A stretch of 64,000 nucleotides of DNA from Glycera tridactyla (lineage: Eukaryota), in contig OZ286459.1 of the NCBI GenBank assembly GCA_965644265.1, forward strand, positions 108,004,001 through 108,068,000, in the 5' to 3' direction. This document shows positions 6,201 through 61,224 of the stretch, piece after piece (within the stretch, counting starts at the first letter, position 1; each line of letters starts with the position of its first letter). Position numbers and translations under genes: made by a program. A model generated the notes under the pieces. It saw only the letters and a program-made list of their open reading frames with translations. It ran no database searches and was not told the origin of the DNA.

Positions 6201-7606
6201 GAACAACAGACTGTACAAGTGATTGATATGTCCAATAAAATTTTGATTCCCTGTTTTTTCACATAATTATCACCCATTTTCCTACATTAGAATATCAGTT
6301 TAACTTCCCAGTGATTGACCACTGACCAATGAGAATCTCAGTTGTGAAAAACATGAAGAGGCTGATAGTAATATATTAGCACAAGCTGCTTTTCCGACTA
6401 ATCAGTATGAACAGTTCTGAGTAGCCGTCCATGCCACTGACACTGATATTGTGATCTTATGTATGTTCCATTTCTGCCATCTGCCTTCTGTGGTAAAACT
6501 GTGTATCCTGAAAAAATGATAGACATTCACCAGTGCATTAATTACCACAGATACTGTCAGAAAAGTATTACAGACAAGAGCATCATTGCTGCAGCACTGA
6601 TGTATGCTTATCTACTGACAGGCTTTGACAGTGTGAGTTACATTTATCGCTAAGGGAAGCACAGGCCCTGTAAATGGCAGATAGTTTCCTCAACATGACA
6701 ATATTTGGCCATTGTGGTAACTCCAAAGCTGTCACAAACTTGGTTGTGAAGGAAGCCAGGGCACTCATTGTAGGTCTATATACACCTCAACATTTCAGTG
6801 ATCTCAACATGTTGCGCCGACACATGTTTGCTTCCAGCAGGTCTGATTCATGGTCACTTCTCCCAACTGAGGATGCATTTTGTCAACATTCATCGCATGC
6901 TCTGTATCAACTCATTATCTACAAATGCACTCACAAGAGCAATATCTGCTTGCTACCAGTAACTGAATATGGGTGACATACCATAGATGGCAGACTGCAA
7001 CCACTAATGATGACAAAGCCAGCAAAACCAACATCTATTGAAGCAGTTTCATGAAACTGAAAAGGTGTCAAAATGCTGAATGTGCCAGATCAGATGTTTC
7101 TTGTTTTGTTGGGTGTGCCTGTGTGTGAGGATTCATATAGAAAATTCATCTGATAAAGACGAACCTTATCAGGTGAGTGTGGTACCAACCCCTGTTTCTT
7201 TTGAGAGGTCAGCATGGCACTGACTACAGTTTTCAGCCTATGGTGGCAACTGAATTTTATTTTTGAACACTTATTCGAATTCCCAAACCTATTTTAGTGC
7301 ATAAGAAATAGGTTCAACGTTACATGAATGGAAATTTTTCATCCAGTATATGATTTCTGTGCAAAGCTTGATGCTCGGGAAATGGTTTGTCGTTTCATAT
7401 GATTGATTGTTTTACCAATTTCCATTGTCAGCAACACCTTGTTATGTTTTATTAGCAGATTGGTTAAGGTGAATTACAATGGTTGCTTTTGATAAAATTA
7501 TCATTATAGGAACAACAGACTGTACAAGTGATTGATATGTCCAATAAAATTTAGATTCCCTGTTTTTTCACATAATTATCACCCATTTTCCTACATCAAA
7601 ATATCA
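2369..7606 (+). repeat. Tandem array, 4 x 1309 bp, near-identical units
   Basis: Units start at 2369, 3678, 4987 and 6296. The ORF track recurs with a 1309 period (2532/3841/5150/6459). Only a few substitutions separate the units. Confidence 0.97.
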
Positions 7607-27813: not shown

Positions 27814-29071
27814 GCCTGCCACACACGCACGCACACACACACACGCACGCACACTTGTAGCGATAATAGTGATAGTGGTGCTTGTGAGTGTGAAGGGACC
27901 CAGTAATAATCATATCAATTAAAACCATGATCGCATAACATTGCTCCTATAGGAATTATCTTCATGCTAGTTGGTAGGGTAGAGTGGGCAGTATTTATAA
28001 CTAGAAACTAGAAGTGCACCATTTCGCGAAATGAAATAAAACATGAGAGCATGATCTTGATGAAGACAAGATGATGGTGGTGGATGAACAACCAACATAA
28101 GTGACAGACACTGGTACAAGGACGATTAGGACGATACTGCGATATCAAGCCACTATCGATAAGGAAAGATATGGTGTCTGTTAGTTATTCTCAACCAAAA
28201 CTAGATATTGAGATCAATACTCACTACTTAGGGAGCATTCACTACAGAGCAGCATTGGTGAGCAGATCAAACTGCAAATTTTGCTGGCCACTTTTGTCGA
28301 AGACAACAATAGAAATGTTAGTCTTGTATGCTCGTGTGCTGATGGTCCTGAACGTACAGCTATACAATGTTAGTCTTGTATATCAGAGTGAATGTACATG
28401 TGCTCACAGGCTTAACAAGTACACCTGTACAATCTTAATAGTGTATGTCAGCGTGATCACACATGTGCTCACACGAATACAAGGTGCGACTAGCTACAAT
28501 TTCATGCACTCTCCTCAAATTGCACTGGTGTGAATGTCTGCATACACTCGAATATTTTGAATAGGATTCACACTTTAGGAACATCTCAGTCGGAATGAGG
28601 AAGTGATGATGCATCGCATCAGATGATGAGGGATTTCTCCAAGGTTGTGACCACGATTGCAGGTTGTACCTGATTGGTTTGTCGTTATGTTGGTGTTCAA
28701 ACATGTCTAACTTGTCTTCCAGATCATGCACCATGGCGACAGGATGTGGGTTATTCAATTAACATAAGGTCAGAAAGCTTTGATTTGGACATAATCTGCT
28801 ACATTTCACAGTTTTGTACCAGTCATTTTCCCATGTATTCAGCCCAGATATAAAGGAGTGAGGGAATTCTCACATTTTCTTGATTTTTTTCTTGGATTTT
28901 CTTCTTATAAACTCCGTTCAATATCTATTGACATCCAGCCTGGAATTGTTGATTGATTGACATGAATCATGGACTGGTATTCAAGACACGTTCAGTCCTT
29001 TTCAGAATATCATTTGACCTATGATTGGTTGAGAATAAGACAACTTGTACACCTTTGGCTTTGAGACTTAC

Positions 29072-29190
29072 CCTCAACCAGTGATGTATATAGGGTAACA
29101 TTGGCTGCTTTGCGCCGCCCCGCGGGTAAACTTAAACCTATTGTCTCTAATTTTTCCCTGAGGGCCCGGCCACCATTTTTAGATTTTGCC
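29072..29190 (-). CDS. TFAP2: AP-2 exon 5c (third copy in transcript order, 119 nt)
   Basis: tttctcttgcag|G GCA AAA...GTT GAG G|gtaagt. Reads [39 protein letters not shown]; 34/39 identical to human TFAP2A exon 5 as recalled. Confidence 0.96.
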
Positions 29191-29243
29191 CTGCAAGAGA
29201 AAGCCGAAAACAGGAGTTGTAAATGTGTCTAGCGTTCTCTTAC

Positions 29244-29362
29244 CTTCAACCAGAGATGTGAGGAGAGTGACCGTAGCTGCCTTACGTCGGCCCGCTGGTA
29301 AACTTAAACCTATTTTCTCTAAACTGTCTCTTAGCGATCGTCCCCCGTCTTTATTTTTAGCT
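29244..29362 (-). CDS. TFAP2: AP-2 exon 5b (second copy, 119 nt)
   Basis: cattctcttgcag|A GCT AAA...GTT GAA G|gtaaga. Reads [39 protein letters not shown]; 32/39 identical to recalled human sequence. Confidence 0.95.
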
Positions 29363-29425
29363 CTGCAAGAGAATGGCAAGAAGGGGCTGGTAAGAGGCAG
29401 CAAATGGTAGGTGAAGCAGCCTTAC

Positions 29426-29544
29426 CTTCGACGAAAGACGTCAAAAGACTGCCTTTGGCAGCTCGGCGTCGTCCAGCCGGTACAGTAAAACCAACTCGTT
29501 CTAATTTATCGCGAAGACTTCCGATGTTACTTTTCGATTTGGCC
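29426..29544 (-). CDS. TFAP2: AP-2 exon 5a (first, most divergent copy, 119 nt)
   Basis: cttctcttttag|G GCC AAA...GTC GAA G|gtaagg. Reads [39 protein letters not shown]; 23/39 identical to recalled human sequence; no stops or indels. Confidence 0.88.
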
Positions 29545-31891
29545 CTAAAAGAGAAGTTAATAGATGACCTAGACTCGTGAAAAGATCACCTGGTGAAATG
29601 AAAAGAAGAGGAAAGTTGAAAGTCGACATGGTGTGCGGAGATGGCATTGTCGACATCCGTTACAAACATCCGACAGACTTCAAAGCTAAAATAGAAAGGC
29701 ACCAACAGACATTTAGTACTCAATGGCAATTCAACACTAGCAATAGACACACTTTTTATAGCTGATGACAATGCATTAGTCATAAACACTTGATCAAATG
29801 CAACTCGTTTGATTGTGTTCCTCCTATTCAGAGAGGGTACTTGGTGCGTATTGATTGCGGAATCAAACTCGATTGTTCCCAAGTGGGTTTGTCAGCAATG
29901 CACTTGGAATGAAATGACAAACAAATTCTTGAACACATTGGTTGATCTATTCATGCCATCTATTATTAATACATTGGGAAATATGGCCATGTGGCCGATC
30001 GTTCACCTTCAACTTGAGCATTAGAAATGAGAGTGACGGGGGTCTATTGTGTGCTTTGACCTTCCAGGGGTCAATTTGTCCTGGACAAAATTTCACCTGC
30101 CTTTGCCATCAAGCACAGGAAGTGGACTGTAAAAACCGCACTACGATACACTGATCACATTTCAGCGTACAAACTGGGTATGGACAGTAGAACTAACAAA
30201 TTTTACCCATCTTTTTTGCAAATTTCCATCCTCCACCCTCCCTCAAACAGAAGGGATTTTACAATTCTATAAGGAATATTTTGATATAAATCAGTAATAA
30301 ATCCATCCGATTATTGGGGGTTAATGCTCAAGGGGTTTTATATAATGGTGAGTGTGTGAGTACGGGGTCATAATGGCCACTCGACATGTTGCATCAGGGT
30401 TGTCAAGGGCTAGCAGAGCCTTAGTGTTCCCAAGGAGCACCAGGTTAAACACCGGACATTACCAATAACACAGAAACACAGAATAACGTAAATCTTAGGG
30501 GAAAGCATAAATATCATAATAACCGAAAAATCAATGAACTGATTTGCGAGAACATACACTATGTGTATACTCAAAGATCATGTTTGTGGATTTTCGGCGT
30601 TTTTGGTGTTTCCAGTGAGAATGGTCAAGTTCGTGTTTCGGGAATAGATCCTCAAAAGAACTTGAGGAGTGCCGACCAAGCACTCCAGATAATAGTGCTT
30701 ACTACAAAAGCGGTGTTTGCTACCTGAACGAGAACAAAAAGGAGACCGTGTGAGAACCACTGAGATCTCATTAAAACCCCTGCTGATGACCCCTTGTTAC
30801 ATGCTTAACCCCTCCCTGAGACATGCACATGCTGTTTATGAAGAATAAACATCCAAAATACCAATAGATCCTCGCTTCAGCATTTAAGAATATCCGCATT
30901 GAATTTGTATGGCGTCATCATACCAAAGTGGCGACGCAGTTCATGATGCAGTCTAAGGTCATCTATTGAAGGTCCACCAACTGTTCTTGAGTTGAAGGTG
31001 AAGCAAAAAGTCTCATAGAAGCCATAGCGAATACTACATAAATGTGGAAGGCTTATAGGACACATAGTTGAATTCCAAACTTAATGGGCATCAGCATCAT
31101 TCCATTGGTTTCCTGAATAGGAAAATGTATGGACATTTTAAACACATTGAAGCAGTTCCAAAGTGACAAATCATATTTTATGTGCCAAAGACCATGCCAT
31201 TCTATTAAAGTTTACTGAAATTCATGTGCCTTTCGAACGCATACTTTGCGGTTGTATGTTTCATACTTTGTGTGGCTTTTGGGGTAGATAATCGCGATGT
31301 TCAAGCATGCTAATCATCATGATAATTACATCACTCGGATATCTATATCGACCCTCTAGATTTGGGAAGTAATACAGATAAGCTTAGTGATTTGACCCCG
31401 AGGATGTTATGCGGCATCCTTCACTGGGAAGCTGTAGTATTGTCTGTTTCCGTGCAGCTCATCATGTTTATGAATCCACTGAGAATCCACTTACCGCCCT
31501 TCGCATTTAGACAAAGTGGAACCCATGGACCCATCCAGACTAATCTCTCGACGAAACACCATGATGTATTAGGGGCAACGATGACACCAATATATCAGTG
31601 GCCAGATGCAAATGCATCACTTATTCGGAAAATTGGCCTGTAATGAATGGGGTAGTGAAAAAGGAAGTTTGCAAAAGGAGGTGAATAACCCTGATACCCC
31701 ATTTAGCTTGCCAGCCTACTTGAATATCCACAATCACCAAATGATGCATGTCAGAATTGAGTGGGTTTTTTTCTGAGTACCAATCTACCTTGTATTTTTT
31801 CCTGCCAGATGTGTTACCTTTCACAGACAGCTATGTTTACCCCGTATTAAAACAAAGTACATTTCCGAAGAGTAGGTTTTAGTAAGTGCTC

Positions 31892-36268: not shown

Positions 36269-36415
36269 GTGTTCTATAACAGGGTTGAGACCATTTGAAA
36301 ATTCGAATCTTTGAATTCTCTCTCTTATAGTTTCACCAACATGTGTTCTATAACAGGATTGAGGCTATTTGAAAATTCGAATCTTTGAATTTTCTTTCTT
36401 ATAGTTTCACCAACA
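36269..36415. repeat. Two-copy 74-bp tandem duplication
   Basis: GTGTTCTATAACAGG...TATAGTTTCACCAACA starts at 36269 and again at 36343 with a few mismatches. Confidence 0.9.
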
Positions 36416-39400
36416 CAAGTCATCGAGAAATAAATGACACACATTCTGAGTAATTTCACTTACCCGCCTGGTCAAAATTCAGTATAGGGCAAAATCACAT
36501 ATACAGCAGGGCAAATTCGAATATACAGTTGAATTTGACAAGCGAAATACGTGGACTTTGAAGCATTCTCATATGAAAGTTGCGTTAGCCAAAATGTAAG
36601 CCTGCGATGCTGGATCAGCACATACATGCATAGTGAAAAACAGTTTTCAACCGGCGTGTAACATCTGTTGAAGGGAAACCGTGTTTGTTTATTTTAGACG
36701 CTATGTGAATAAATCAACACATGCTTTTGAAAAATTGTTTTGTCCTGTTGATGCGGAGTTGAATGAGAGAGGGGGGAGATAGTAGTTGTTGGATAAGACA
36801 AACAAGATTCAGGTTTGAAGTGTTGAAAATCCAGCTGATTCTTCATCAAGCGTTATGGGAAGCGGTGCGTTTTATCTGCTCCAGGTTTTAGCAGGCTACG
36901 ACGGTCGAGCTAAGAGCCGGTGCAGTCAGGCGTGAATGAGCGAACCTAATGCATCCCATTCGCCCTCCATCAAAGCGGCGAGTTGCAGAAGTGTGAGCCA
37001 ACATGACCCTTGTAACACCAGCTGTGACCAGGGACCGTAAACATTAACCTTAGGAAGGATTCCAAAAGGATGGATTGGTTTGTGTATGCCGTGTTCTTGG
37101 CATAATGCCATCTCCTCTGCAGGCATCACCTTCACAAACCCCAGACACAAAATGATGGGGACCAACAAGATTGTCATGTGGCAATTATCAAGCCAGGGAA
37201 TTAGGTATGCCATGGCTTTCATGAACCCAAAGATGGCATATCTTACTGGAAGCTGACACTCAAGTCGGATAGCAATGCTTCAGTTCAAGTTTCTTATACT
37301 GCACTCTCCGAAAAGGGCGGACGAGCCTCAAAATACAACTGTTTCAATAACTGTGAAAATGCGAGTTGTAATCCTTTCCCGACCATACCTATGACATCTG
37401 TAATTCATCTTTGTACTTGGCAATGAGATATATCGAATGGTACTTCGGGTAAGGATCGGGTTGGAATTGCGTCAGATTCAACTTCATCATAATAGCTAGT
37501 GAGTATCGTTGAATATCTTAGGAAAGATTAGAAGGATATGTATGCTGTTCGGATGGTGGTGTTAAGATGACACCAACGTCACAGGGGTGCTGGCGAGCGC
37601 ATGTGCGGTTACAGTCGACGTGCTCCCTCTGATCTTGGTTCGACGTACGCGGCGTGAATGACGACGAAATGGCGTCACGCGACCGGTCCGTCTTCTCACG
37701 TTACGGCACCATGACGCGTAGACCGGTTTGGTGGCTTGTCTTCCCCGCTAGAGCCCGTATCAGTCAGTACACAACAGGATAGAAGCAATGCCAATAGGAT
37801 AGTAGTCGTATACCCAACTGCGGTTTATTAACCAGATATCTTCTATTTGAAACCCGAGTAAAGTTTTGAAGCGATTCATAGCAAACGGATCCTATGGATT
37901 CAGTATGATATGTAACACACTTAAAGGGACCTCGGGTAAGAATATCTTATAATCGATTATTCACTATACCCGACTATACACGAAAATCTATCTTTTATTA
38001 CAAAATTGTGTCACATTGATGACTTGAGTTCTTCCATGGGGCAGAAACTGCTGGAAGATATTTTAGAACGTCTTCACTCTTCATTGTTTTGAATACAATG
38101 TCCGATGGCACTATGCTATTGAACGCTGAAATGATGCCGACCAACTGATCCTATACAGGCAATCTGTTACACAACATCACGAGAGAGAAAATCAATCGCC
38201 AACAAGACTTTTTTTCGCCCACGAAGGTTGTAAGTCAATCACGTGCCTAACCCACATAACATATGCACGCATATCGCCAATAGCCTGGGCTTTGCTCTGC
38301 TACGAGCTCGACATGCGATCATGGTAACATATGTAAGGGGGTTATATCACAAAGAACTAGGGTGACTCTAAAATTGGGGGTAAAGTCAGTAAAAGATAAG
38401 TGAGAAAACCTTCCAAATTTCTAATTACTGCGGTTATTTTGTGAAATGATGCGTTGCTCTTTCAATGCAAGTTATACATCATGCACAATTTTCGTAAGTG
38501 AGAAAAAAAATTAGCAGTAGCACAAAAACTGTCCTCGACGGTGTCAGGTGAGAGTGGGATTGGATTACGTCAGGGGTAAACTACTTCAGCGAGACCGAAG
38601 CACGTGGAGAATCACACTCATGCTATTCGAGCAATTAAAACATGGCAAATATTGATGTCGATTGCATACATAATGCTGACCCAGGTGTTCAGCCTACGGC
38701 CAAATTTCGCGCGCACGCGTGCACACTTGCATGCACTGACTAAGTTGTGTATACTGTTTGCTGTCAAGAGCACGCCCTAGTAAGTAGGAGATTTTGGGTG
38801 CATCCTTTCATCAAAGCCTGTTCATGGCTATATGTCCAAGTGTCATTTTATTGAAGATAATANNNNNNNNNNNNNNNNNNNNNNNNNNNNNNNNNNNNNN
38901 NNNNNNNNNNNNNNNNNNNNNNNNNNNNNNNNNNNNNNNNNNNNNNNNNNNNNNNNNNNNNNNNNNNNNNNNNNNNNNNNNNNNNNNNNNNNNNNNNNNN
39001 NNNNNNNNNNNNNNNNNNNNNNNNNNNNNNNNNNNNNNNNNNNNNNNNNNNNNNTGAAGACTTCATGAAAAGAATCACTAGGCCTCGATACCCAGCATCC
39101 AAATTCATCTTTCTGTGGCTGAGAGGAGTGCAGAATTATAGGTGAGCCCATTTATGTGGGAAGTCCTATGAATCAGTGGGTTGGCTGTGGAGCGCATATA
39201 TCAGTAAGCGGGTTTCGATGTCAGCCACAGGACCATCTGCTCTCGAGATATATTCACGAGCGACAAGTAGGTAATGCAGTGGCAAGCCAACAAATCAGTT
39301 TAGCCACCTAGTATAGCCCTTTGTCTCAACCACTCGCTCTGCTTCTACGAGAAATATGGACCTTCACTAATGCCTCATTTCTTGTTTATCTCCATCATTC

Positions 39401-39469
39401 ACGGGCACTCAAGAGGTGGGTATCTAATGTATTATTGGAAGAAGTAATAGTCATCTTTGTTGTCATTTT

Positions 39470-39506
39470 TGTTATTGTTGTTGTTGTTGTTATTGTTGTT
39501 GAAGTA

Positions 39507-39541
<35 letters not shown>

Positions 39542-39950
39542 CGTGGTAGTGGTAGTATGGCTGTAGTAGTTGTAGTNNNNNNNNNNNNNNNNNNNNNNNN
39601 NNNNNNNNNNNNNNNNNNNNNNNNNNNNNNNNNNNNNNNNNNNNNNNNNNNNNNNNNNNNNNNNNNNNNNNNNNNNNNNNNNNNNNNNNNNNNNNNNNNN
39701 NNNNNNNNNNNNNNNNNNNNNNNNNNNNNNNNNNNNNNNNNNNNNNNNNNNNNNNNNNGTGGTAGGCTATGTAGTAGATGTAGAGGTAGTAGTAGAAGTT
39801 GTAGAATTAGTAGTTATGGTGGTTGAGGTAGTAGTTATTGTTGTTGTTTTGATTGTAAAATTAGTAGCAGCGGTAATAGTAGTTTTTTGTTGTTGTTGTT
39901 GGTGGTGGTGGTGGTGGTGGTGGTGGTGGTGATGGTGAGGTGGTGATGGT
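39470..39950. repeat. (TTG/TAG/TGG)n compound repeat around an N-run
   Basis: Visible in the sequence. Confidence 0.9.
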
Positions 39951-41683
39951 GATGTTGCAACATTAGCCGCAGCAGCCAGACATCTAACTGCATCAAAATA
40001 ATCCAATACCGAACATTTATACGTCGGTGTAAAAAAGGAGGTTGGCATCTGGTAAATATGGGTCAAAATGATATTCAGATAACGTTGCCTTAAGGGCGCA
40101 TTCTTCTAGATGGAGCGTGAGGAGCGGAGATGGGGGGGGGGGGGGGGGGCTAGACTAGTGTGTCAGAGACAGTGGGTAGTGCCTAGTATGAAATGATATT
40201 CGGCCAATAACCATGATCACTTGCCCGAATGAGATCAGGTTGGGCTTGTAGCCCCGCGCCACTCTCATTATCATGTCCTCGGGCAAGAACATGACAAAAT
40301 CCGGATCATCACCATTCTACCGAATCTCCCAAATTACCAAATTCACAAACATATCTAATCATTCAAAGAATGATTTGAAGACTAGAATGAATATGCAACC
40401 AGTGAAATGTAATAGTCAACGAGATAGCAAGTGAGGAAGTAGGAGACACGTTTTGTAGAATTCAGGATCAATCCGGTATATGGGAAAGAAGGTCGGCCAC
40501 CTCATTGTTAATGCGGCAAATTCTACGAACGTGGTTATGTTCATATTTATTTACAAGAGAATCTCCGGCGCTAGTAGAAGCAAGCCTAAGAAAACAAGAC
40601 AGCAGCAGTTCTTGCACAATATCTCATGCCTAGATACCAGCTGCACGTGCAAGAAATGATAAAAAAAGAGAATTTCTCCTCAGAGAAGCATTCCCTCGAC
40701 CAATCACCCCTGGATACACCAGATCTCTTGACAACTATTCGTCACCAGGAGACAAATCTCCATATAAAGAAATGAGGTTTAGAAGCCAGATCAAAATAAG
40801 GATAAAACTCTTTCGCAGGTGGTGCTGATTAAAAATAGATATCCGTCCAAAAAACGATGTCAGGAAGGAATGGACCTTATATATTCAGATACATTAACCC
40901 AGTGACCGACCTACAAGGGTAGGTATGTGGGTGGGTAAGTAGATAAATTGATGGATTGATGGGTGGATGGATGGATGGATCACGGGATAGATAGATAGAT
41001 AGGCGTGAATTAGTATTTCTACATGCCCGTCTTTGATGTATTTCATCGGAGTTGGTTGATGGTCGTGTTAGGCAGGTAGCCACGAAACACAGTTACCAAT
41101 AGTGGTCGCTATGGACAGGGATCCGCTAGACAGGTGATCTTTAGACAGATAGAAGTTTCTCAAGTATAGATTATTCACGTAATACTCATAGACTGGATTA
41201 TTCAGGATTACATCGCAAATGCGCCGATCCTATTCTATCTCAGGGTGAGAGGAATGATATTTTGGCAGTGAGTATGAATCTGTGTGTTGTGGGAGAAGGA
41301 GAGCCCCCGGGGCACCATTAATGAACGTGACCCAGTCTGTGAGTTAGTGTAGCGTGCTTACTGTAGAGTGTGAGCACATTGTCAAATGTCCCTGCGGGCA
41401 TCTCATCCTCCTCCGCTCACACTAACTCACTAACCTGGCAATCCTTGCTGACATGTCTTCTAGTCAACTATTTCTACGTCTAATCTCTTCACACTACTCA
41501 CGCAACCTGGTTAGATGTAACCCACTGATTTCCAGAAGATTATACTCTTTAACAAACTTCCAACAACCTTTTAGGTAACAGACCAATTCATATAGTGTTG
41601 GGATTACCTAAAGGTCACGAACATTATAGTTGTTGTCCTCGTAATTATAAAAAGATACTACTTTCCTTCTTATTGATTCATTG

Positions 41684-44021: not shown

Positions 44022-44217
44022 CGTCGTAAGACTCCTCCTAAGAGTGAAGCATTGAGGCACTCAGGTGGGGAGAGGCGCCGCTGTACTTCAGCTACGGTGA
44101 CTTTATACTTGGAGGTGGAACTGAGGAGAGAGAGTCGGCCAGGCACAGAACAGAAGACGTCTGTTGGTGTTGGCATCCCACTGATGACGATATCCTTCTG
44201 GTCGGGCTTCCGTATAC
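44022..44217 (-). CDS. TFAP2: AP-2 exon 4 (196 nt, phase 1 to 2)
   Basis: ttctgatagcag|GT ATA CGG...TTA CGA CG|gtaaga. Reads [64 protein letters not shown](R); the core is essentially identical to vertebrate AP-2. Confidence 0.98.
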
Positions 44218-46940
44218 CTGCTATCAGAAACAGAAGAAGAAAGAAAATATGTGATTAGATGTGCTACTGGAACCTGTCGAATAAGACCAGGTTAATATTT
44301 CAAATTAGCTTACCCAGTCTCATACTTATGCGGCACAATACATGAGCGCTATAGATATAGGGAATCAGTGCTTATTGCATGTATCGTTGAGCACATCGCC
44401 AAAACAATTATGTGATCACACATTCAATTGTGTTAGATATGATGGGTATACAGAAGAAAGCGTCCGCATTTGTCAAACTCTCATCACATGAAATGGCATC
44501 ACCATTTGGTTCACTATATTCGCAAAATGTGCACGATAATTCCGCCTTGCATATATTGTCATCATTACATAATGCTTCTTTGGATCTGGCTCGAGAAGGA
44601 GTGGAGCCTGCTAAGGTGAGACTGTCATCATGGGGTATTCTGGTAGTGTCTAATGATGGGATGGGATGCACTGTAGTGGTCGGGGGATACTACTGTCAAT
44701 ATTCCTGCTGTTCGATTTCTGACACATAGCTGAAGACAGAGTCAATATTGTCTTGTGTGTGCGGTCATTGAGCGCAGGCAGAATCTGTCTTTGAGATGGT
44801 ATAATAGGACTCCAACCACTACCATAACCAACAAAAACGAGACAATACCATGATGTATAGATCATTTCCTTATCCATACAGTCACATAATGAAATTGAGT
44901 GATGTTAAGGTCTGGAAGTATTTGATAGTCAATTGGAGTATTTGAGATATGTTTTAGGGGGATTTTGATTATTCTGTGACTTTGGCATTGTACGTGTTCA
45001 TTTGAGGGGCACTGGGTGAGCTGCTCAAATATCCACAACAGTAGCCAATCAACACTAGCCACAGCCAGCACAAACAGAAGAAAAACAGTAACGATTGGCA
45101 GCGAGGAGGCAACAGCCAGTGCTGATTAGATGGTCAAACAGAGGGACAATACATGGCAATCCAGTCGGTACACACACTTGTTCCCACTTGTGTTTGTTGA
45201 CTGGGTGAAAACTGGGACGGCTTCATTCGATACATAGATTGAATCCAGGTTCAGCTAGACGCTACTGTCCTTTACCCCAACCACACTGACCCTGGCGTAC
45301 ATGCTTAGTCCTTTGTAACTAAATACAGACTTTAAGTAGAGAGAACCGTAACGGTGAATTGTGGCTATGAAGCACAGTATAATTTCCAACACCGTAATAA
45401 CCAAACCAGCTTCTGTTATACATTACTAAATTCATCAATCCAGCCATCAATCAAGCCATCAATCATTCAATGAGACGGGATTGATTTCTCGTCAATTGTG
45501 TATTATCCACCCTTAGTCATATAGTTCACAGAAATATTTCAGGATTATACACCTTCATCAATAATGTCTCATATAATATGTTAAATTCACTTGAGTATCA
45601 GTTTGGCTTTCTGCCTTGAAGCAGGATGGGCTGTCCATCACATGATTTCACACATGATAACATTCATGAAATCGATATCCCATAAACCAGCTATGGACCA
45701 GAACTGAAAGATTGCTGCTACCCAAATGAGGAATATAACCGATAAAACCAAGTGCCGAATATCTACTCAATCATTCTTACTGCAAGAACATGGGACCTAC
45801 TTGCTCATAATTCGAACACAAAATTTATATGAAATAAATCCATGTCACACTCAACTAGTTGAACCACAAAAATATTACCACATAAAGCATGAAATAAAAA
45901 GTGGAAGAGCACAAACGGCAATTAGAAACCATGTTAGTGGTGTATATCAGCGCTAGGTGCTGCAGCAGCAAACTCAAAAACAACCCCCCAAAACTAATAA
46001 AAATTTCTAAATACCACAGAACCTCCAAATATAGTCATACAGAAGATTATTGGTTATACTAAATGAGAATGATGAAGTCAAGCAGCATTCTGATAGGAAG
46101 TTGGTATTATCTGGTTACTCGTGGGTATATATCAATACAATCACTCTATTAACCCTTTGTAGTAGTGAGTGTCTATTCTAAAGGCTGCCATCAAATTGCT
46201 CCATTGTGCATATCATGTTGCAGGGCTGGGTCTTGACACTATGACTGTCTGAGGTCATCTTTGCTCCCCCTTTAGAAGGTCATTTGGTATTCCATGCTTA
46301 ATAATCTACTTCCTAAGGGAATAAATTCTATATGAATTATTGCAATGATTCATCATATCATTGTCATTGTATTCAATATCTAGGATTATCTAGCCAATGT
46401 TGAATCTTTTGAATCCACGTGTGTGTGTGTGTTCATTTCTGAGCAGCGAATCTCTGTAGTTGACCCAAGCAGCAAGCTGTAAGAGTGGGATGGTAGACAT
46501 ACAAAGGAGTACAAAGGTCTCATAATTTGACAAGGATGAATTCGCCAGATGAAGTGGTATTGTTGAATAGTGACTGAGCGAATCATCACACTGACATGCT
46601 CTCTCTATTGGCTGTGATGCGTATCAGCGGGACAACCTGACATTTAATACCGGCCCAGACTCACTTGACTGATTTAATGGCAGAAGTGAGTGGCTCTCAG
46701 GTTTCAACCAGGGTCAAAATTGGTGTGTTGATGTCTATATCGCAAATAATGCTTTGATTCATGGCCTCTGTTGTCAGTCCCTGTTGATATAACATTCAGA
46801 ATAGAAGCCATTGGACAGTGAAACATCTTCATTTGATCTAAATGAAATAAAATTTCATAGTGATGAGGGTGTGTTCACTTGGCCCACCACCCAAACACCA
46901 GCATTTCGAAGAATTTTCTGATGGGTTTCATGTAGAAAAT

Positions 46941-47048
46941 ACAGATAAGTCTACCTCAAGAGACCACCTCTCTACAAAGGTAACCTGCTCACAAAGGCCA
47001 CCCTGAGTAGAGTTCTCTGATGTATTGAGGGGACCAATAGCTGTCTGT
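46941..47048. mobile_element. Degenerate MITE, same family as 620-755
   Basis: AGACCACCTCTCTACAAAGG...CACAAAGGCCACC internal repeats after a TACAG start. Confidence 0.4.
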
Positions 47049-48619
47049 ACTTTGGGATCAATCTGTCATCCTTTAAGTTTATCCAGTGGAAGCAGTGAAG
47101 TTTGTTTCGTACTAAAAGGGACTGATGCGATGATATGACTGAATGGAACAAGATATTTGATGGCAGCAAACATAGCAATAAAGCAAGGGTGAGGAGCACA
47201 GATATGCCGCATGACTTCACAATTTGAAGAGAATATGCTTTACTTGAATTTTTGGGCAGATCCTCTTCAAATTGCCTGTAATGTGGTCCATATTTTTTCC
47301 ATATGTGAGGTGCCAAAATTTCAGGATAATACACAGCGACACCAGAACTGCTGCTGCAGCTGCGATCTAAAACACACCATAAAAGGACACATGTTGTTAT
47401 CAATCAATAAAGGATGATGACAAAGACAAACAATCACACAAGCTGAAACTGACATCAGATAGACTGGAGTCACAACTGGAGTCAAAACAATCAGTGCCAA
47501 CACACCACTAAAAATTGGACAATTTACCATATTTGGAGCACGCTAACATATGCAAATAGTGGTATTTTTCACCCGTTGATAGCTTTTCCCATTTGACAAC
47601 TCACTCAGACTCTCTGCGGAATCGTTTAGTATTTTTGGATCGAAAATTGCTGTCTCAGCTACCAACGTATCGATCCCATATTACGAAATGATGAAAGATG
47701 CCAGATACAATAGTAAAGTCACCGTGGTTCAATATTGGGACACAATCTAATTAGGTATGCATATAGTTTGCCTTAATTTGAGAAGCTGTGAGGATATTCA
47801 TAGATGGATGGTTGGTTTGGTTGAGAATATGTTCAACCAAGCAACCAAGCAACCAACCAACCGATCGACCAACTAAACAACCACTTAAGATATCTCTGTA
47901 CGGAATTGCATGTGTCCTTGCCTGCTCAATAGTGTATGAATGCTGACAGGGTGGTATAGGAACTGCCATTTCTATCACGGACAAGCGCTGAATTATGGCA
48001 ACGTTTGAATGCGATTCACATACTGGAATGAGCCCCGAAAACTCCAAGCTTTGCAACTGTACGACGTGACCTCGACAAAACCCGTTCAACAATTATCATG
48101 ACATTGAATCTAACAGCCTGCATTGAGAGAGAAACAATGATAGCTGTCTCGCTGTGATAAAGCCTTACTGGTCTTTTTTCACAACAAGCGCTTGATGGGA
48201 AATGTACGATTGGTTACAACAATGGTGGTATCAGTGTTACAATATCTCATTCTCTCATCATTAAATGGAGCGTCTAGGGTTGCATGCAAGATGGAAGAGT
48301 AAAGAGTAAAAACTGGCTGGCAATTCAATAAAGCCAGGGTATCTGTTCAGATGGAATGGGACTAGACTGCACAGAGCTAGCTGTCTTCAGAATCAACTGC
48401 ACTCGCAAACGGCGATTACATCCCACCCAGGATACGAGCAAATTTGCGACTACACGAATGGAACAAAGGCCCCTGCCGATGTGCATGCCACACAATAACC
48501 TTGACTCCACATTTCCCACTGGTTGCAGTCGGATTGGCGGAGGCAATACTCAGACTCGATCTTGCCCCCATATACATGTGTGTGTATCTGTATTTGTGTG
48601 TCTGTGTGTGAAAGGAGGA

Positions 48620-48880
48620 AAAGATTGAAAGAAAAGAGGGGAAAGGAAGAAGAAAAGAAAGGGAGAAAGAGAGATTAGCAGTGAAAAAGAAAGACAAATA
48701 GTAGAAAAGAGATAAGAAAAAATGCAAAGGAAGGGTGAAAAAATGACAGAACAATAAATGACCGAAAAGGAGCACAGGCAGGGAGATAGAGAAAGAAAGA
48801 AAGAGAGAAAGAAAGAGAGGGAGATAGAAAAGGAAAGGGACAAAAAAGAAAGAATAAGAAGATGAATAAATGACAAAATA
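48620..48880. repeat. Purine-rich (GA/GAA/GAAA) low-complexity tract
   Basis: Visible in the sequence. Confidence 0.85.
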
Positions 48881-50779
48881 AATATTTATTCCTTTTCTTT
48901 ATCAAAATAGATTCCACTCTCAAATCTGGCGTTCGGGCATAATCACCACCAACAATAGCATTCTGCAGAAAATGAGATTTCTTTTCAAGTTTGCCACACA
49001 TTTTGTGTAAAACCATGAAGTCAAAAGTCAAGGGAATTTATTAGTCTGACAAATCATTGCATTCCACTCTGGATTCGCGTGATCACAACCAAGTTGTGTC
49101 TATGGAACATATTAAACTGCCTGCAAACGTTTTATTGTCACTGGCTTTGTGGATTCTAATTTGATGCGATTGTTAGAGGAGCGCATTTCAGGCGGACAAT
49201 AGACTTTCTGCTTGATGTATACTAGTGAAATTTCATCCGTTCGTGTGCTTCTCTCTAATCCGGCAGCAGGTTTCGTGCCTCAAATGGAGATGAAAGCAGA
49301 GCGATTCGCACTCATTATGATCCTTAGATAATGCTCTTGGCACCTGAGCTGCTAAAACACCAGCTGATTCCACCCACGAGAGGGACCTTCTCTGTAAGGC
49401 GACCGTTTTTTTCTCTCTCACGGGCCCATTCAGTCCCTTCTTTAAAGAGACCGTTTGTCGTCTCATACCATTCCGGTTTTTTTCTGGATCATTACAACAA
49501 ATCACCAGAAAAGGCGATTTTGTTCATGTGCATCATGTCCTATGTCGAAATCATAATAGGCAATATTTGATATAAAGTAAAATCTAAATCAACTACAGTC
49601 GAAACGCCGAAATGTGGTCGCTCAAGTCTTGTGGTTCATTAATACATGTGAATTATAATGAAAATACTTGAGCCGGAAATCAGAAAAAAAATGTTTGTAC
49701 CACTTGAGTGAAGACTCCGGAGATTGGTGTTCCCCTCACACACAGGGGTCGGTGAGGGTAGGGAAGTCGATTTCGGGGTGAGGGTGTTAAGGAAAGATGA
49801 GTGAGCAACTTGATACTTCACTCAGGTGTGAACCTATTGAGTGCAAAACGCAATTTGACTGTCACTTGCGTTTACCGTTATTAGCAAGCATTCTAGCTGA
49901 TGCGCACACGCGCGTGCGTGCCCCAGCACGCCGCACAGATGATCCTCTTAAACCACCTAAATACTAGATTATCTCCTCTCATAATCCCATGATCCACAGA
50001 ACAAAATGGCCGACTGCCATACTAGTTTCCTTCCTCCATCGGCAGAAAACTAGGACAGCAGCGATGCGGTGATATCTTCACGAAATCACTCCACAATTTC
50101 AGATGATGTGGCACCTGTGAGGTATGTGAATGGGGTCAGATATGTGAATATGTAATATACACAAATGTTTGGATCAGAACCAGTCTACTGATGTTTAAAA
50201 TCAATGGTGCAGCATGAAAACATATTTGGGTCACCATACTTGATTTCGAATGACATCGAATCGACTCGTCCATGCGCGAATACAATTCCTAACTATCATG
50301 AAATTATTTGGCTCCATTATCCTCTTCCAAAGCTGGCAACGTGAGCATCCTAGTGGATTGGAATATGTCTAAAGAGAAATGACATTAATAGATGATTATT
50401 TTCAAGTTGAGGACCGAAATAGACAGGAGATCATGAAAGAGAGAGCACGCGTGTCATCATTGGTGGTATTGATCGACAGTTAGTCAACTGCAAAATGCAA
50501 TAAATGCATGCCAGTTTTTAGTCAGTCAATCTATATAATATACTTAACGTTGATGCCCTGATTGTATGCATGCTAGGCACGCTCAATTCCATGCCGTGTT
50601 CATTTCAGGCTTGATGAGAGTTCGGGGTGATTTTGGCTCGATGCAAGTCCTGTCCATTAGCAGATGTTTGCTTGAAACATAATATGCCGTGGACATTTCA
50701 TGATTTTATGTGACAAGAAGGGCGACTCCCGTGTCAGTACCGATGATAAACCAAATTGGACGAATCTTGATTGGCTGTC

Positions 50780-50935
50780 CTGTGATGATGATGGTGTTGC
50801 TGGTGATGATGGTGTTGATGATGGTGATGATGATACTGCTGCTGCTGCTGCTGCTGCTGATGATGGTTATGCTGTTTTTTGTTATCGTTTGTGTTGTTGT
50901 TGTTGTTGTTGCTGCTGCTGCTGCTGATGATGATG
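50780..50935. repeat. (GAT/GCT/GTT)n compound repeat
   Basis: Visible in the sequence. Confidence 0.9.
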
Positions 50936-51939
50936 CCAACGAAGACGAGGACGTCAGCAACCAGTGAGAATGACGTACTTATCACGTGATATTCATGAAT
51001 CATGACGCGATCATGTCACCTGACAAAAACAGGAGCAGAGGCGGAGTATTGATCGGACAAACCGGCCCGATGTGAGGCGGTCAGGTGAAAAATGGACGGT
51101 CAACACAGTGCATCTGACGTGTATTTACGCGACGTCAAATAGTGCTGGGCTTCAGCAGACTCCGCCGAGGCAGTTACAGGCCTGATCGATCCTTATGCAA
51201 GTGGGAAACCTCCATCAATTTGGAGCAGTTCAAGTCCTAAGCACACACAGTTCCACCAAAATACACATTCACAAAATGAATTATAAATGAACATCCAGGC
51301 CATGCTGAATGGGATTATCTTGAGCCAGTTGTAGTCATCCATCAAGTAGAATTTGAAAGATTGTCTCTTTAAGCATGTCATGTATCCCTGGTTTGATTCC
51401 ATCTGCCCATACCTAATTTTGGTCATGAAATAAATGCAATAAGCAAATGAGGCCATACTTGATAGCTATGGCTTTCAGACCTCATAGTTTTCGCAAAGAA
51501 CGTGGTATGAGCTAGTAGTAAGTTCGAGATGTTTCTATCGCAGTGAACCCGAAATGACTGTGCTAGGTGAGGGACAGGATGCTGATGGTCAGACTCTAAT
51601 ATGGTTAAAATGGTGCACTTAGTCAGGCTAGTTGGGACATGATGTATGTCAGTCCCAGTGGTCAAGAATGGCCGCATATCGGCACGCCCTGATCATTATC
51701 GTGAAAGATGGGCAAGCTGCTAGCTCATCTAAGGCCAATACTCCACAAAACTGAGAAGTGCTCTTTACATGTGCAATCAGATTCATATCAGCATCTTCAC
51801 AGTATCTCTGTATCTGTATATGGATCAGAGTATCAGTACAAGTATCTTTAGCTGCATCTATATTAGTAACAGTATCTGTATCACCATCTCTATCAATATC
51901 AGTATCAGTGTATCATTACAAGTATCTACCATATGTATT

Positions 51940-51985
<46 letters not shown>

Positions 51986-52030
51986 GGTGGCGGTGGTGGT
52001 GATGGTGGTGATGGTCACGTGGTGGTGAAT
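51940..52030. repeat. (TAG)n(TGG)n repeat
   Basis: Visible in the sequence. Confidence 0.9.
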
Positions 52031-53589
52031 GTAGTGAAGTTGGTGAGATCACACGTCCTCGGGATATTTGTTTCAACCTTGCGACAAACGAAGAATACGA
52101 CCATTCCAACTCTTGCATGTGCAAGGCTTAAAGACCGACAGAAGTGAGGATGATGTTGAGAAGGCAAGTGAAAAGCTCTCGTGTTTACGAGGCAAGAGGG
52201 CGACAAGTCTTGTGTAATCTGAGAAGTGAACAAAGGTAGCATAACTGGCATCTGGTGGCGACGGGGATAATCAACCAAGAAGCATGTTACGTCGGCTTCA
52301 TTGTTCCCTTCCTAATGGCGTCGGTTGTCAGCGCTGATCATGTGTCACCGTTTCCATGCCACCTCCACCCCGAAAGTAGAATACCCATCCCCTTCATCCT
52401 TTCCTCTAACAGACCCAGACCTTGACAATAGCCCCAATTCGGGAAGAAGATTCGCCAAGGACCGAGTTGGCGACTGCGCAAGTCGCAGATGTAACATAAG
52501 TGTTGTTGGTGACGTCACAAAGCGTCAAGTTGAGGTACTTCCGCGCACTAGAGATGTCACCGCGAGTGTCCCTTTCCCGCTACATGTGTTACATTTCAAA
52601 ATTTTCAAAATTGATTAATTGATTGATTGACTAATTGTGTAAGGTTTTATATGGTCCATACTAGAAGTCACCAATGTAGTGAGATGATTCCTGGATAGGG
52701 AAAACACAGGAGTTTGTCAACAGGTAAATGCAGCAACTGCCACGCACTTAATCGTGAATACTACACCTAATATCAGCCCGAGTTCTGGCAATCAAATGAG
52801 GCCATAAGATAATTTGACAGGCATGAGAGCAGTATAAAGCGTTCCGTTATCGGCCAACTTGCATACTTCACGCCTTGATGACTATATTGTGATGTCAAGT
52901 TTATGATTTAAATGCAAGGGGTTGTTGTCTATTACTGCTGTGAGGGGAGGAGATTAGGTCAACAGGATTCCGAATTTACAATGACAAAAGTACCAATCAA
53001 AAATGCTAGATTCTGCCCCCAAAATACTGTACACCAACAACAGCTATAATTCCGACATCACAGGCTTAAAGATGATATGATCGCTATAGGGTATATATAA
53101 CACGAATGAGGTCATATGAGGAGGGGGAGAGCTGTTTTTTCAAGTTTTTTGTTGATTCAGTGGATATGGTTTATCATGGAGATTGGTGAGAATTCTCGGT
53201 GGGACGAGCAATCATTGGCGAGCCAATTAAGGCAGCTTATTTTGTGGGTGATGATGATGATTAGGGTTGTAAGTGGCTGTGATTACCTTCTTCTCTAACA
53301 CGGCACCCATGAAATATTATCGGCCTAGCTCCACAAGACAGCCTGCACATGCACACACCCTCCTCCTCCTATCTCTCTCGCTGGATTGCAGGCTTCTAGG
53401 TGGTTAGCAACGCAGGTCTGATAACACTACAAAAGCTGGGGATCCATTAGACCTGCTGGAAGTCCTACATCTCATGTTTGTCTGCCATTCACTTTCGAGG
53501 AGGACCAGGGCAAGGGGCACACCATCAACCAGAACAGCAAAAACAACAACCAGAACATCTACAGCTACGATCAAAAGGACAAGTTCTAG

Positions 53590-53820
53590 AGAAGTGCAGA
53601 TGAAGAAAAGGAAGACAATAGAGAAGACCGCGAAGAAAAGGAGGAAGAGAACAGAAGAAAGGGAAGAAGAAGAAAAAGCCAAGGAAGAAGAAGAAGAAGA
53701 AGAAGAAGAAGAAGAAAGAAAAGAAGAAAAAGAGGAGGGAGAGGGGAGAGGAAGAAGGGGGAAAGTGGGAAGAGAAGATGAGAGGAAGGGGAAAATAGGG
53801 AAAGGGGAGGGGAGAAGAAG

Positions 53821-53852
<32 letters not shown>

Positions 53853-53905
53853 GGAGGAGGAGAAGAAGAAGAAGAAGGAGAAGAAGAAGAAGTAGTAGAT
53901 GAAGA
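53590..53905. repeat. (GAA)n / purine tract
   Basis: Visible in the sequence; source of the poly-E/R and poly-L/S ORFs. Confidence 0.93.
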
Positions 53906-54393
53906 GGAGTAAGGAAATACGATCCGGGAATCATCATCGACCTGGATCTACATGTGGGTTACTAATAAGACTGCGTCAGTACTATTCCATGAATAACGAT
54001 GTTGATTTCTTCTGACTACGTATTTCAACAACAACGATGCCGATGCCTTAGCTAGACGTCAATTGATGATAGGATGCGCCTAATGACGTCACACGTAACT
54101 ACGTCTCCGTCCTCTTGAGCAGGAAATCGCCAAGCTCATTCGGCAAATTGCTACCAAATACTGGCACCGATTTGAAATGTCCTGTTTGCTCCCGTCTTGC
54201 TGCATCCTGTGGTGAGGTCATCAACGACGTGAGACAACCGTCACCTAACTTCCGCTTCCGTTCACTAATGACGTAGACTTTGCGTTAATGACGTCAGCAA
54301 GATGAGGGATCGTGATAAATGTGATAACTATATCAAGGACGTAATAACAAGCATTCCTCATACTTATATCCAGGGCAGTACAGACCGTAGATA

Positions 54394-54549
54394 CAGTCAA
54401 ACCTGCGTGAGGGATCGCCTCTATACAAAAGCCACCTTGCCTATAGAAACCACTCTGAGATGTTACCATGATTGCAATTTCCAAAGTAAACAACCTCTCT
54501 ACAATGACTACTTTCTGATGAGACCAAGGGTGGTCCTTATATGCTGAAC
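54394..54549. mobile_element. MITE of the TACAGTCAAACCTG family
   Basis: Starts TA-CAGTCAAACCTG, contains TATACAAAAGCCACC and ends ...GGTGGTCCTTATATGC with a decayed right TIR. Confidence 0.5.
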
Positions 54550-60500: not shown

Positions 60501-61224
60501 TATCACAACCCACCGCCAATACAAATCTTGCTATCTCATTAAAACGGGTTCCAGATGATGCAATTAGAGCAGTAGGTCTATTCGACCAATCAGAGGGGCC
60601 CGCCTCAAGCTGGTTTTCATCATTAAGAGCTAGGTACCTTAATCAGGTTAAGCTCCGACAACATAAGCATGAGAAGATTCGCTGCGCTTTCATCTTCCCA
60701 ATCGCGACTAGCTAAATATTTTGCGGCCACTTGTGGGTGTTGTGTGGGAGATTGGATGGTGGTGTGGGGGAAAGATGGCCGCCGGGAAGATAGAGAAAGT
60801 GAAGGGAGGGGGTGATGCTTCCGCAAACAAACGTCTGATGGGAAGGATGAAGCTTTGATGGTTGGGTCTGCCTTGTCGCTATTCTTACCGCCCTGCGGGC
60901 ACCATCACCTTGAAACCTACATGACAAGCACAGGGTAGCCAACACACTCACTCTACTAGCACAGATTCTATACTAACTTACCCTCTGGCTTTATCTCACA
61001 AACTGACACACACACGCACGCACACACGCATCCACGCACACACAACACACACACACCCTTTGGTTCTCTCCCTTTCTATCACTCTCTCTTTTGAGCTTGG
61101 GTGTCTGAGTTTCATGAATATTTCCCTGCCATTGAATCCCCAGAAGAGTCCTGAATGATTCCACCAATGTGCATTACATGGGCGCCTCAATATAGCCCAG
61201 GTGGTGCTCATGGGACCAGTCAAC

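What the first reader, a model, noticed from the sequence alone, without database searches (positions are those of the whole stretch)
29072..29544. Triplicated, apparently mutually exclusive exon encoding the AP-2 basic DNA-binding segment
Seen: three tandem 119-nt exons, each with AG/GT sites, phase 2 to 1 and an open frame, lie between single copies of exons 4 and 6. Their peptides are [39 protein letters not shown] (5a), [39 protein letters not shown] (5b) and [39 protein letters not shown] (5c). 5b and 5c share 31/39 residues, yet 17 of those 31 codons differ synonymously, so the duplication is old and under purifying selection. Established: this exon is single and highly conserved in vertebrate TFAP2 genes, and known AP-2 isoform diversity is mainly at the first exon. 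Inference: one gene makes three AP-2 proteins with different DNA-binding modules, which could form up to six dimer types because AP-2 binds DNA as a dimer. I know of no report of this in AP-2 but cannot search the literature.
Basis: partly seen in the sequence, partly recalled or inferred. Interest (0 to 1): 0.95.

Follow-up and report, generated by a model that had tools for sequence, protein, structure and literature searches.

The report
Three alternative DNA-contact exons in AP-2
An invertebrate AP-2 transcription-factor gene carries three intact tandem copies of the exon that encodes its DNA-reading loop, only one of which can be spliced in at a time, so one gene probably makes several AP-2 proteins with different DNA-contact surfaces.

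Summary
A minus-strand AP-2 (TFAP2) gene has three tandem 119-nt copies of exon 5 (29544-29426, 29362-29244, 29190-29072). They are separated by introns of 63 and 53 nt. Each copy has an AG acceptor, a GTAAG donor and an open frame. Including one copy keeps the frame open; including 0, 2 or 3 copies gives an early stop.

The copies are old and constrained: synonymous sites are saturated and dN/dS is about 0.1 or lower.

The layout is not unique. Four other unidentified genomes carry two tandem copies 58-65 nt apart, and both copies are under purifying selection. The brachiopod Lingula also has two copies, and its RefSeq isoforms X1 and X2 differ only by this exon. Owenia, Paralvinella and an oyster have a single copy.

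Exon 5 encodes Loop2 of the DNA-binding domain. The base-reading Lys257 is kept in all three copies, but backbone-contact residues differ. Copy 5a changes nine positions that do not vary in 112 other exon-5 peptides.

No transcript of this species could be found, so use of each copy, especially 5a, is inferred rather than shown. Seven literature searches found no paper describing this in AP-2.

Verdict: a real feature and a new member of a known kind, namely mutually exclusive exons that swap part of a transcription factor's DNA-binding domain, as in FoxP.

The parts
44022..44217 (-). AP-2 exon 4 (196 nt), single copy. It ends ...[12 protein letters not shown] with 2 bases of the last Arg codon. 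It encodes Loop1/alpha2 of the DNA-binding domain.
   Evidence: Pfam TF_AP-2 positions 1-44, 73.8 bits.
29426..29544 (-). Exon 5a (119 nt): [39 protein letters not shown]. This is the most divergent copy.
   Evidence: Pfam 29.7 bits. Nine residues are unseen in 112 other exon-5 peptides. dN/dS <= ~0.13 against other copies.
29363..29425 (-). 63-nt intron between 5a and 5b. The best branch-point-like motif is CTTAC, 34 nt from the donor.
29244..29362 (-). Exon 5b (119 nt): [39 protein letters not shown].
   Evidence: It has the same AKNKDGGR loop as the Lingula X1 exon.
29191..29243 (-). 53-nt intron between 5b and 5c. The only yUnAy motif lies 23 nt from the donor.
29072..29190 (-). Exon 5c (119 nt): [39 protein letters not shown]. 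This copy is closest to the canonical animal exon 5.
   Evidence: 37/39 identical to copy 2 of L001.
18432..18573 (-). AP-2 exon 6 (142 nt), single copy, starting G|GT GAA... ([20 protein letters not shown]...).
17762..18059 (-). AP-2 last coding exon (helix-span-helix dimerisation part) through the stop codon.
29409..29419 (-). 11-nt stretch CTGCTTCACCT just after the 5a donor. It is perfectly complementary to the exon 6 acceptor junction AG|GTGAAGCAG (18575-18565).
   Evidence: It is unique in the window. 5 of 500 shuffles reach 11 nt. It is not conserved in L003 or Lingula.

Best explanation
This is a cluster of three tandemly duplicated, mutually exclusive versions of exon 5 in the single AP-2 (TFAP2-type) gene of a spiralian animal whose AP-2 sequence is most like annelid sequences. 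Each pre-mRNA must keep exactly one of 5a, 5b or 5c, because the exon is 119 nt long and any other number of copies shifts the frame into an early stop. Such mis-spliced mRNAs would be unproductive and probably removed by nonsense-mediated decay. The very short inter-copy introns (63 and 53 nt, with branch-point-like motifs only 23-34 nt from the donor) may also hinder splicing of neighbouring copies to each other. The swapped segment corresponds to TFAP2A residues 256-294. It covers most of Loop2, which enters the DNA major groove, plus helix alpha3 and Loop3. All copies keep the base-reading Lys257 and the PAGRR loop, but they differ at backbone-contact and loop-shape residues. 5b carries S258N and N260D. 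5a carries N260S, G261N, G262I, R263G and K282R, among others. The dimerisation domain (exons 6-7) is common to all. The gene would therefore yield AP-2 subunits with the same dimer interface but different DNA-contact loops, able to form homo- and heterodimers with graded or altered DNA affinity or site preference. Shown here: the architecture, the frame logic, purifying selection, and conservation of two-copy versions elsewhere. Inferred: actual expression of each copy, decay of mis-spliced forms, steric hindrance, and functional differences in DNA binding.
For: Exact exon structure and splice signals are confirmed. Only single inclusion keeps the frame. All three copies match Pfam TF_AP-2 positions 46-84. 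For 5b-5c, dS is about 1.5 and dN/dS about 0.10. For 5a against the others, dS is saturated and dN/dS is at most about 0.13. Two tandem copies with 58-65 nt introns and AG/GT sites occur in L001/L002, L003, L010 and L004/L005. Copies at the same position in different species have dN/dS of 0.02-0.09. Between L003 and L010, each copy shows 15-16 synonymous against 2-3 non-synonymous changes. Same-position pairs between the window and L001 are more alike (35 and 37 of 39) than cross pairs (32 and 33). Lingula anatina RefSeq isoforms X1 (XP_013408010.1) and X2 (XP_013408011.1) are both 481 aa and differ only by this exon. Both exons lie in tandem in the Lingula genome. Structural roles of the residues come from the TFAP2A-DNA crystal structure paper PMC10450164. 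Residue rarity was measured against 112 distinct exon-5 peptides.
Against: No transcript or annotated protein of the window's species was found in the protein collections or by a splice-junction scan of metagenome contigs. Usage of each copy is therefore unproven. No 5a-like exon exists in 1.84 billion representative proteins or upstream of the copies in L001 and L003. 5a could therefore be lineage-specific and rarely used. 5a replaces residues that are invariant elsewhere, and in human TFAP2A the G262E change weakens DNA binding about 7-fold (PMC10450164), so 5a could be a weak or non-binding version. Two annelids (Owenia, Paralvinella) have only one copy. Whether 53-63 nt introns are too short to splice in this organism is unknown, and Lingula keeps its two copies 690 nt apart.
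Confidence: 0.72

Rival explanations
1. 5b and 5c are a functional mutually exclusive pair, but 5a is not a regular protein-coding alternative. It would be a rarely used, decaying or purely regulatory exon, for example a decoy whose inclusion lowers productive AP-2 output.
For: 5a has no counterpart in any other genome or protein searched. It changes nine positions that do not vary in 112 other exon-5 peptides, including invariant G262, [R/K]263, L276 and K282. Its Pfam score is much lower than the others, 29.7 against 45 bits.
Against: 5a keeps a pyrimidine tract, an AG, a GTAAG donor, an open frame and 22-24 of 39 residues despite saturated synonymous divergence (dN/dS <= ~0.13). It retains K257, K259, L265, R266, G273, PAGRR, AA and E294. 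That pattern would not survive long neutral decay.
Confidence: 0.18
2. Only one copy (the canonical 5c) is ever used. 5a and 5b are silent leftovers of tandem duplication.
For: No transcript data exist for this species. Annotated isoforms of molluscs, a nemertean, amphioxus, echinoderms and chelicerates show a single exon-5 version.
Against: dN/dS is about 0.1 with saturated dS between the copies. The upstream, b-type copy is conserved with dN/dS of 0.03-0.09 across the window, L001, L003 and L010. Splice sites are intact in every copy of every locus. Lingula RefSeq models use both of its copies.
Confidence: 0.06
3. The triplication is an assembly artefact, such as collapsed or expanded haplotypes or a mis-join.
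For: None specific. The window does contain masked or gap stretches elsewhere.
Against: The copies are only 56-73% identical at the nucleotide level. No N run lies within 28,000-30,000. The same tandem layout is seen in independent assemblies of other species.
Confidence: 0.01

Closest known systems
Lingula anatina AP-2 gene, RefSeq isoforms X1 (XP_013408010.1) and X2 (XP_013408011.1)
   Same: It is the same gene family and the same 119-nt exon. Two tandem copies in the genome are used alternatively in the models. The X1 exon carries the same AKNKDGGR...D[S/T]LEK loop as window 5b, and the X2 exon carries the TLY of window 5c.
   Different: Lingula has two copies, not three. The order is reversed (c-like first). 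The spacer is 690 nt instead of 53-63 nt. There is no 5a-like version. It exists only as automatic annotation, and no paper describing it was found.
FoxP / FoxP1 alternative forkhead-domain exons (Santos et al. 2011, PMC3002244)
   Same: A transcription factor has a tandemly duplicated exon inside its DNA-binding domain. The copies are spliced alternatively and the isoforms differ at DNA-contact residues. This is an invertebrate single-gene solution set against vertebrate paralogues.
   Different: It is a different fold and family. FoxP has two versions with expression demonstrated, and the duplication is dated to the bilaterian base. Here there are three versions, expression is not shown, and the distribution is patchy and apparently recurrent.
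Vertebrate TFAP2A-E
   Same: The DNA-binding and helix-span-helix domain and exon 5 content are the same. K257 reads the GCC half-site and Loop2 spans the exon 4/5 junction (PMC10450164; PDB 8J0K and 8J0Q matched).
   Different: From my own knowledge, vertebrates diversify AP-2 through five paralogous genes and alternative first exons, with a single exon 5 per gene. All vertebrate proteins retrieved here show one canonical exon-5 peptide.
Sterically enforced mutually exclusive exons (alpha-tropomyosin exons 2/3 type; recalled from memory, not read here)
   Same: Adjacent alternative exons are separated by an intron whose donor-to-branch-point distance looks too short (23-34 nt here).
   Different: The minimum spliceable intron of this organism is unknown. 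Frame incompatibility alone already explains exclusivity. Lingula keeps a long spacer.
Docking-site/selector RNA pairing clusters (Dscam1 exon 6, 14-3-3 xi; recalled from memory)
   Same: It is a cluster of more than two alternative exons. One 11-nt complement links the 5a donor region to the exon 6 acceptor.
   Different: No selector was found for 5b or 5c. The complement is not conserved in L003 or Lingula, and it covers the acceptor itself rather than an intronic docking site.

Membership tests
AP-2 (TFAP2) transcription factor gene | TF_AP-2 domain (Pfam PF03299) covering the DNA-binding and helix-span-helix regions | tested here: met
   Exons 4, 5a/b/c, 6 and 7 match profile positions 1-44, 46-84, 86-132 and 136-197, all above the 23.4-bit cut-off.
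AP-2 (TFAP2) transcription factor gene | DNA-reading residues of the solved TFAP2A-DNA complex (S222, S247, K257; R254/R255) | tested here: met
   ...SSTSKY......NASLL......LRR|AK... are present, and K257 is kept in 5a, 5b and 5c.
AP-2 (TFAP2) transcription factor gene | N-terminal activation region with the PY motif (exon 2) | not testable with these tools
   No match upstream of exon 4 within the window (44218-64000). Exons 1-3 must lie beyond the window or in masked sequence.
Tandem-duplication mutually exclusive exon cluster | Neighbouring exons of equal or similar length with the same splice phases | tested here: met
   Three adjacent exons of 119 nt, all entering after 2 codon bases and leaving after 1.
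Tandem-duplication mutually exclusive exon cluster | Sequence homology between the candidate exons | tested here: met
   22-31 of 39 residues are identical, with tblastn E-values of 1e-10 to 1e-16 between copies.
Tandem-duplication mutually exclusive exon cluster | Joint inclusion or skipping is incompatible with the reading frame | tested here: met
   0, 2 or 3 copies give a stop within at most 15 codons of the aberrant junction.
Tandem-duplication mutually exclusive exon cluster | Each copy maintained by purifying selection or conserved in other species | tested here: met
   dN/dS is 0.02-0.13. Two-copy versions occur in five other loci or species. 5a is supported by the within-gene comparison only.
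Tandem-duplication mutually exclusive exon cluster | Transcripts that contain exactly one of the exons, with each exon seen in some transcript | not testable with these tools
   No transcript of this species is in the collections. The only support is indirect: the Lingula RefSeq isoforms.
Sterically enforced exclusivity | Donor-to-branch-point distance below the spliceosome's minimum | tested here: inconclusive
   Predicted distances are 34 nt (5a|5b) and 23 nt (5b|5c), and spacers are 58-65 nt in four other loci. The minimum for this organism is unknown.
Docking/selector RNA pairing | Conserved complementary elements, one per variant, competing for a common docking site | tested here: not met
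   Only one 11-nt complement was found (5a donor region against the exon 6 acceptor). It has weak statistics (5 of 500 shuffles) and is absent in L003 and Lingula.

The most novel reading that the evidence does not exclude
AP-2 in a group of spiralians is a splice-programmable DNA reader. Alternative exon 5 versions give Loop2 variants with measurably different affinity, half-site or spacer preference. These include a recurrent AKNKDGGR form shared by this animal and a brachiopod, and a radical 5a form lacking the Gly-Gly-Arg. They would be deployed in different cell types and would combine as heterodimers, doing with one gene what vertebrates do with five TFAP2 paralogues. The tandem duplication of this exon would have arisen more than once (the annelid-like lineage, Lingula, and an unidentified planktonic animal), pointing to repeated selection for this solution.
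Probability: 0.3. Interest if true: 0.75.

Novelty: new member of a known kind. Interest (0 to 1): 0.55.

Why it matters
AP-2 factors are key regulators of ectoderm, neural-border and sensory-cell development. Their DNA-binding domain is regarded as nearly invariant, with isoform diversity thought to lie in first exons and gene paralogues. An exon cluster that swaps the loop entering the DNA major groove would add natural variants of Loop2. Their binding properties can be measured directly against the solved TFAP2A-DNA structure. It would also be a second clear case, after FoxP, where alternative splicing inside a DNA-binding domain in invertebrates parallels gene duplication in vertebrates. 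The patchy distribution (1, 2 or 3 copies in different spiralians) gives a tractable system for studying how mutually exclusive exons arise and are kept.

Tried and rejected
1. I ran phmmer with 5a against 1.84 billion representative proteins. No 5a-like exon turned up. The top hit, P0001, is a low-complexity repeat protein and a false positive.

2. I ran three profile searches for proteins of this species or close relatives. No protein of the window's species was found, and no transcript carried any of its three exons.

3. I scanned metagenome contigs for the spliced exon4-exon5 junction. Both matches were chance hits in bacterial-type sequence.

4. I tried to name the organism of L001 by searching papers for its assembly accession, and found nothing. 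A tree of the AP-2 C-terminal half leaves the window unresolved among Lingula, Owenia and an annelid group.

5. The Lineus locus could not be fetched because the gene is too long.

6. Exons 1-3 were not found in the window.

7. I tested the docking/selector idea. Only the 11-nt complement noted by another reader was found, and it is not conserved.

8. A codon tree of exon-5 copies is too short to resolve the duplication history. It supports only win_5b+Lingula_2 (91) and weak b-type and c-type groupings.

9. An Rfam scan of the window found nothing.

10. A first attempt to align separate exon pieces to a crustacean backbone misaligned exons 6 and 7, so I rebuilt the alignment.

Full report
**1. 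Observation**

The gene lies on the minus strand. Reading 29580 to 29040 shows three 119-nt segments at 29544-29426 (5a), 29362-29244 (5b) and 29190-29072 (5c). Each is preceded by a pyrimidine-rich tract ending in AG...cttctcttttag...ccattctcttgcag...ggctttctcttgcag. Each is followed by gtaag.

Motif scans and translation place a single exon 4 at 44217-44022, ending ...[13 protein letters not shown] single exon 6 lies at 18573-18432, starting [20 protein letters not shown]. The last coding exon lies at 18059-17762.

All six pieces hit Pfam TF_AP-2 in collinear order. The three exon-5 copies all map to profile positions 46-84. tblastn and an HMM scan of all six frames find no further copy in the window. 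Masked N runs in the long flanking introns cannot be inspected.

**2. Frame logic**

Joining exon 4 to any one copy and then to exons 6-7 gives an uninterrupted 250-residue C-terminal half. Skipping exon 5 gives an immediate stop. Including two or all three copies gives a stop 10-14 codons into the second copy. Retaining either small intron also ends in stops. So only single inclusion is productive.

**3. Age and selection**

5b and 5c share 31/39 residues, and 17 of the identical residues are coded differently. This gives dS of about 1.5 and dN/dS of about 0.10. 5a shares 22-23/39 residues with the others, at saturated synonymous divergence.

Against single-copy annelid exons, 5a has dN of 0.30-0.33 with dS saturated or about 2.6. 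A copy free of constraint for that long would not keep a frame, splice signals and about 60% identity. Nucleotide identity of 56-73% also rules out an assembly duplication.

**4. The same layout elsewhere**

A phmmer search with 5a against 1.84 billion cluster representatives found no 5a-like exon. It did find three open reading frames that run through two tandem exon-5 copies.

- L001/L002 is an NCBI assembly, GCA_022702875.1, plus its sequencing run.
- L003 is a 265-kb ENA contig that also holds exons 4, 6 and 7.
- L004/L005 are Tara Oceans metagenome contigs.
- L010 is another metagenome scaffold, found through a frame-shifted read-through.

In these four, the copies are 64, 61, 58 and 65 nt apart, and every copy has AG...GT.

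In L001, L003 and L010 the upstream copy shares S9/D12/T30 with window 5b. The downstream copy shares [A/V]9/E12 with 5c, often with N30 or an aromatic residue at position 34. Same-position pairs between the window and L001 are more alike (35 and 37 of 39) than cross pairs (32 and 33).

Same-position comparisons give dN/dS of 0.02-0.09. Between the fairly close L003 and L010, each copy shows 15-16 synonymous against 2-3 non-synonymous differences. So both copy positions are coding exons under selection in several species. The b/c duplication probably predates their divergence. The L004 pair looks like a separate duplication (weak support).

**5. Named species**

Profile searches seeded with the window's exons retrieved annotated AP-2 proteins, and I listed their cluster members.

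Lingula anatina RefSeq isoforms X1 and X2 are both 481 aa and differ only in exon 5. X1 reads [40 protein letters not shown]2 reads [39 protein letters not shown]. Both exons lie in tandem in the Lingula genome, 690 nt apart.

The Lingula X1 loop, AKNKDGGR...D[T]LEK, matches window 5b, and the X2 TLY matches window 5c. A codon tree joins 5b with the Lingula X1 exon (91%) but is otherwise weak. Common descent and convergence therefore cannot be told apart.

Other taxa have a single copy:

- Owenia fusiformis, Paralvinella palmiformis and an oyster have a single exon 5 in their genomic loci.
- All annotated isoforms of abalone, scallops, oysters, mussels, clams, octopus, the nemertean Lineus, amphioxus, crinoids, sea stars and horseshoe crabs carry one version.

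A tree of the C-terminal half without exon 5 puts L003 with annelids. It leaves the window unresolved among Lingula, Owenia and that annelid group. The window's nearest sequences by path are annelid-like.

**6. What the exon encodes**

The solved TFAP2A/B structures match this domain (PDB 8J0K, 8J0Q). In the structure paper (PMC10450164), Loop2 connects helices alpha2 and alpha3 and enters the major groove.

- K257 makes the base-specific contacts to GCC.
- S258 and N260 bond the DNA backbone.
- K259, R263, R266 and K282 belong to the positive DNA-binding surface.
- The disease mutation G262E weakens binding about 7-fold.

Exon 5 is residues 256-294. All three copies keep K257, K259, L265, R266 and PAGRR. 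5b has S258N and N260D. 5c differs mainly at K271T and L289Y.

5a has N260S, G261N, G262I, R263G, L276V, K282R, N285K, V286G, T287S and L292F. Nine of these ten residues (all but G261N) are not seen at their position in 112 distinct exon-5 peptides gathered here. G262, [R/K]263, L276 and K282 are invariant in that set.

The dimerisation region is encoded by the shared exons 6-7, so mixed dimers are plausible. That step is inference.

**7. How exclusivity may be enforced**

Frame incompatibility is shown. Decay of the mis-spliced forms is inferred.

The spacers of 53 and 63 nt hold branch-point-like motifs only 23 and 34 nt from the donor. Similarly short spacers recur in four other loci, although the gene's other introns are 0.4-15 kb. 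This fits steric hindrance, but the minimum intron of this organism is unknown and Lingula has a long spacer.

The 11-nt complement between the 5a donor region and the exon 6 acceptor is real and unique in the window. It is only modestly unlikely (5 of 500 shuffles) and is not conserved.

**8. What is missing**

No protein or transcript of this species was in the collections. A junction scan of metagenome contigs gave only chance bacterial matches. Expression of each copy, above all 5a, is therefore not shown.

One Logan transcript from an annelid-like species (P0360, run SRR26183964) carries a divergent exon 5, [39 protein letters not shown], in an otherwise normal full-length AP-2. This shows that non-canonical versions are expressed in that group. 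No sibling isoform was found for it.

**9. Novelty**

Seven full-text searches found no paper describing alternative or duplicated exon 5 in AP-2. The nearest published precedent is the alternative forkhead-domain exon of FoxP/FoxP1 (PMC3002244).

The two-exon form is already implicit in the RefSeq annotation of Lingula. Other first-stage notes on this genome list many tandem exon pairs with 41-44 nt spacers (unchecked). The AP-2 cluster may thus be one instance of a genome-wide habit.

I class it as a new member of a known kind: a tandem-duplication cluster of mutually exclusive exons inside a transcription factor's DNA-binding domain. The three-copy state and the radical 5a version are its particular features.

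Noticed in passing
window 2348-7600 (+): A tandem array of a 1309-bp unit with at least 4 copies about 95% identical to each other, downstream of the AP-2 gene's 3' end. Its nature is unknown (satellite or repeated element).
   Followed up: partly
L009:930-1046 (Logan SRR26183964; protein P0360): A full-length spliced AP-2 transcript of an annelid-like species carries a strongly divergent exon 5 ([39 protein letters not shown]; VGF as in window 5a). No sibling isoform or genome was available.
   Followed up: partly
L004:258-551 and L005 (Tara Oceans metagenome contigs): Two tandem exon-5 copies 58 nt apart in an unidentified planktonic animal. In the codon tree the two copies pair with each other, which suggests an independent duplication of the same exon.
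   Followed up: partly
L008 (Paralvinella palmiformis, GCA_025642065.1) / protein P0286: The deposited gene model KAK-type 'hypothetical protein LSH36_226g04021' inserts non-AP-2 sequence between exons 4 and 5 and between exons 6 and 7. This looks like retained or mis-called intron sequence. The genomic exons themselves are normal and exon 5 is single.
   Followed up: partly
window 29409-29419 and 18565-18575 (-): An 11-nt perfect complement between the intron just after the 5a donor and the exon 6 acceptor junction. It is unique in the window, reached by 5 of 500 shuffles, and not conserved in L003 or Lingula.
   Followed up: yes
window 36269-36415 and about 39300-40000: A 74-bp unit repeated twice (93% match) and a long GTT/GTG-type simple repeat lie in intron 4 of the AP-2 gene. 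Several masked N runs interrupt introns 4 and 5.
   Followed up: no
same genome, other windows (first-stage notes): Many first-stage notes on this genome report tandem duplicated, apparently mutually exclusive exons with 41-44 nt spacers (Nav, Cav1, TRPC, SERCA, EB1, Quaking and others). This suggests a genome-wide abundance of such clusters. I did not check them.
   Followed up: no
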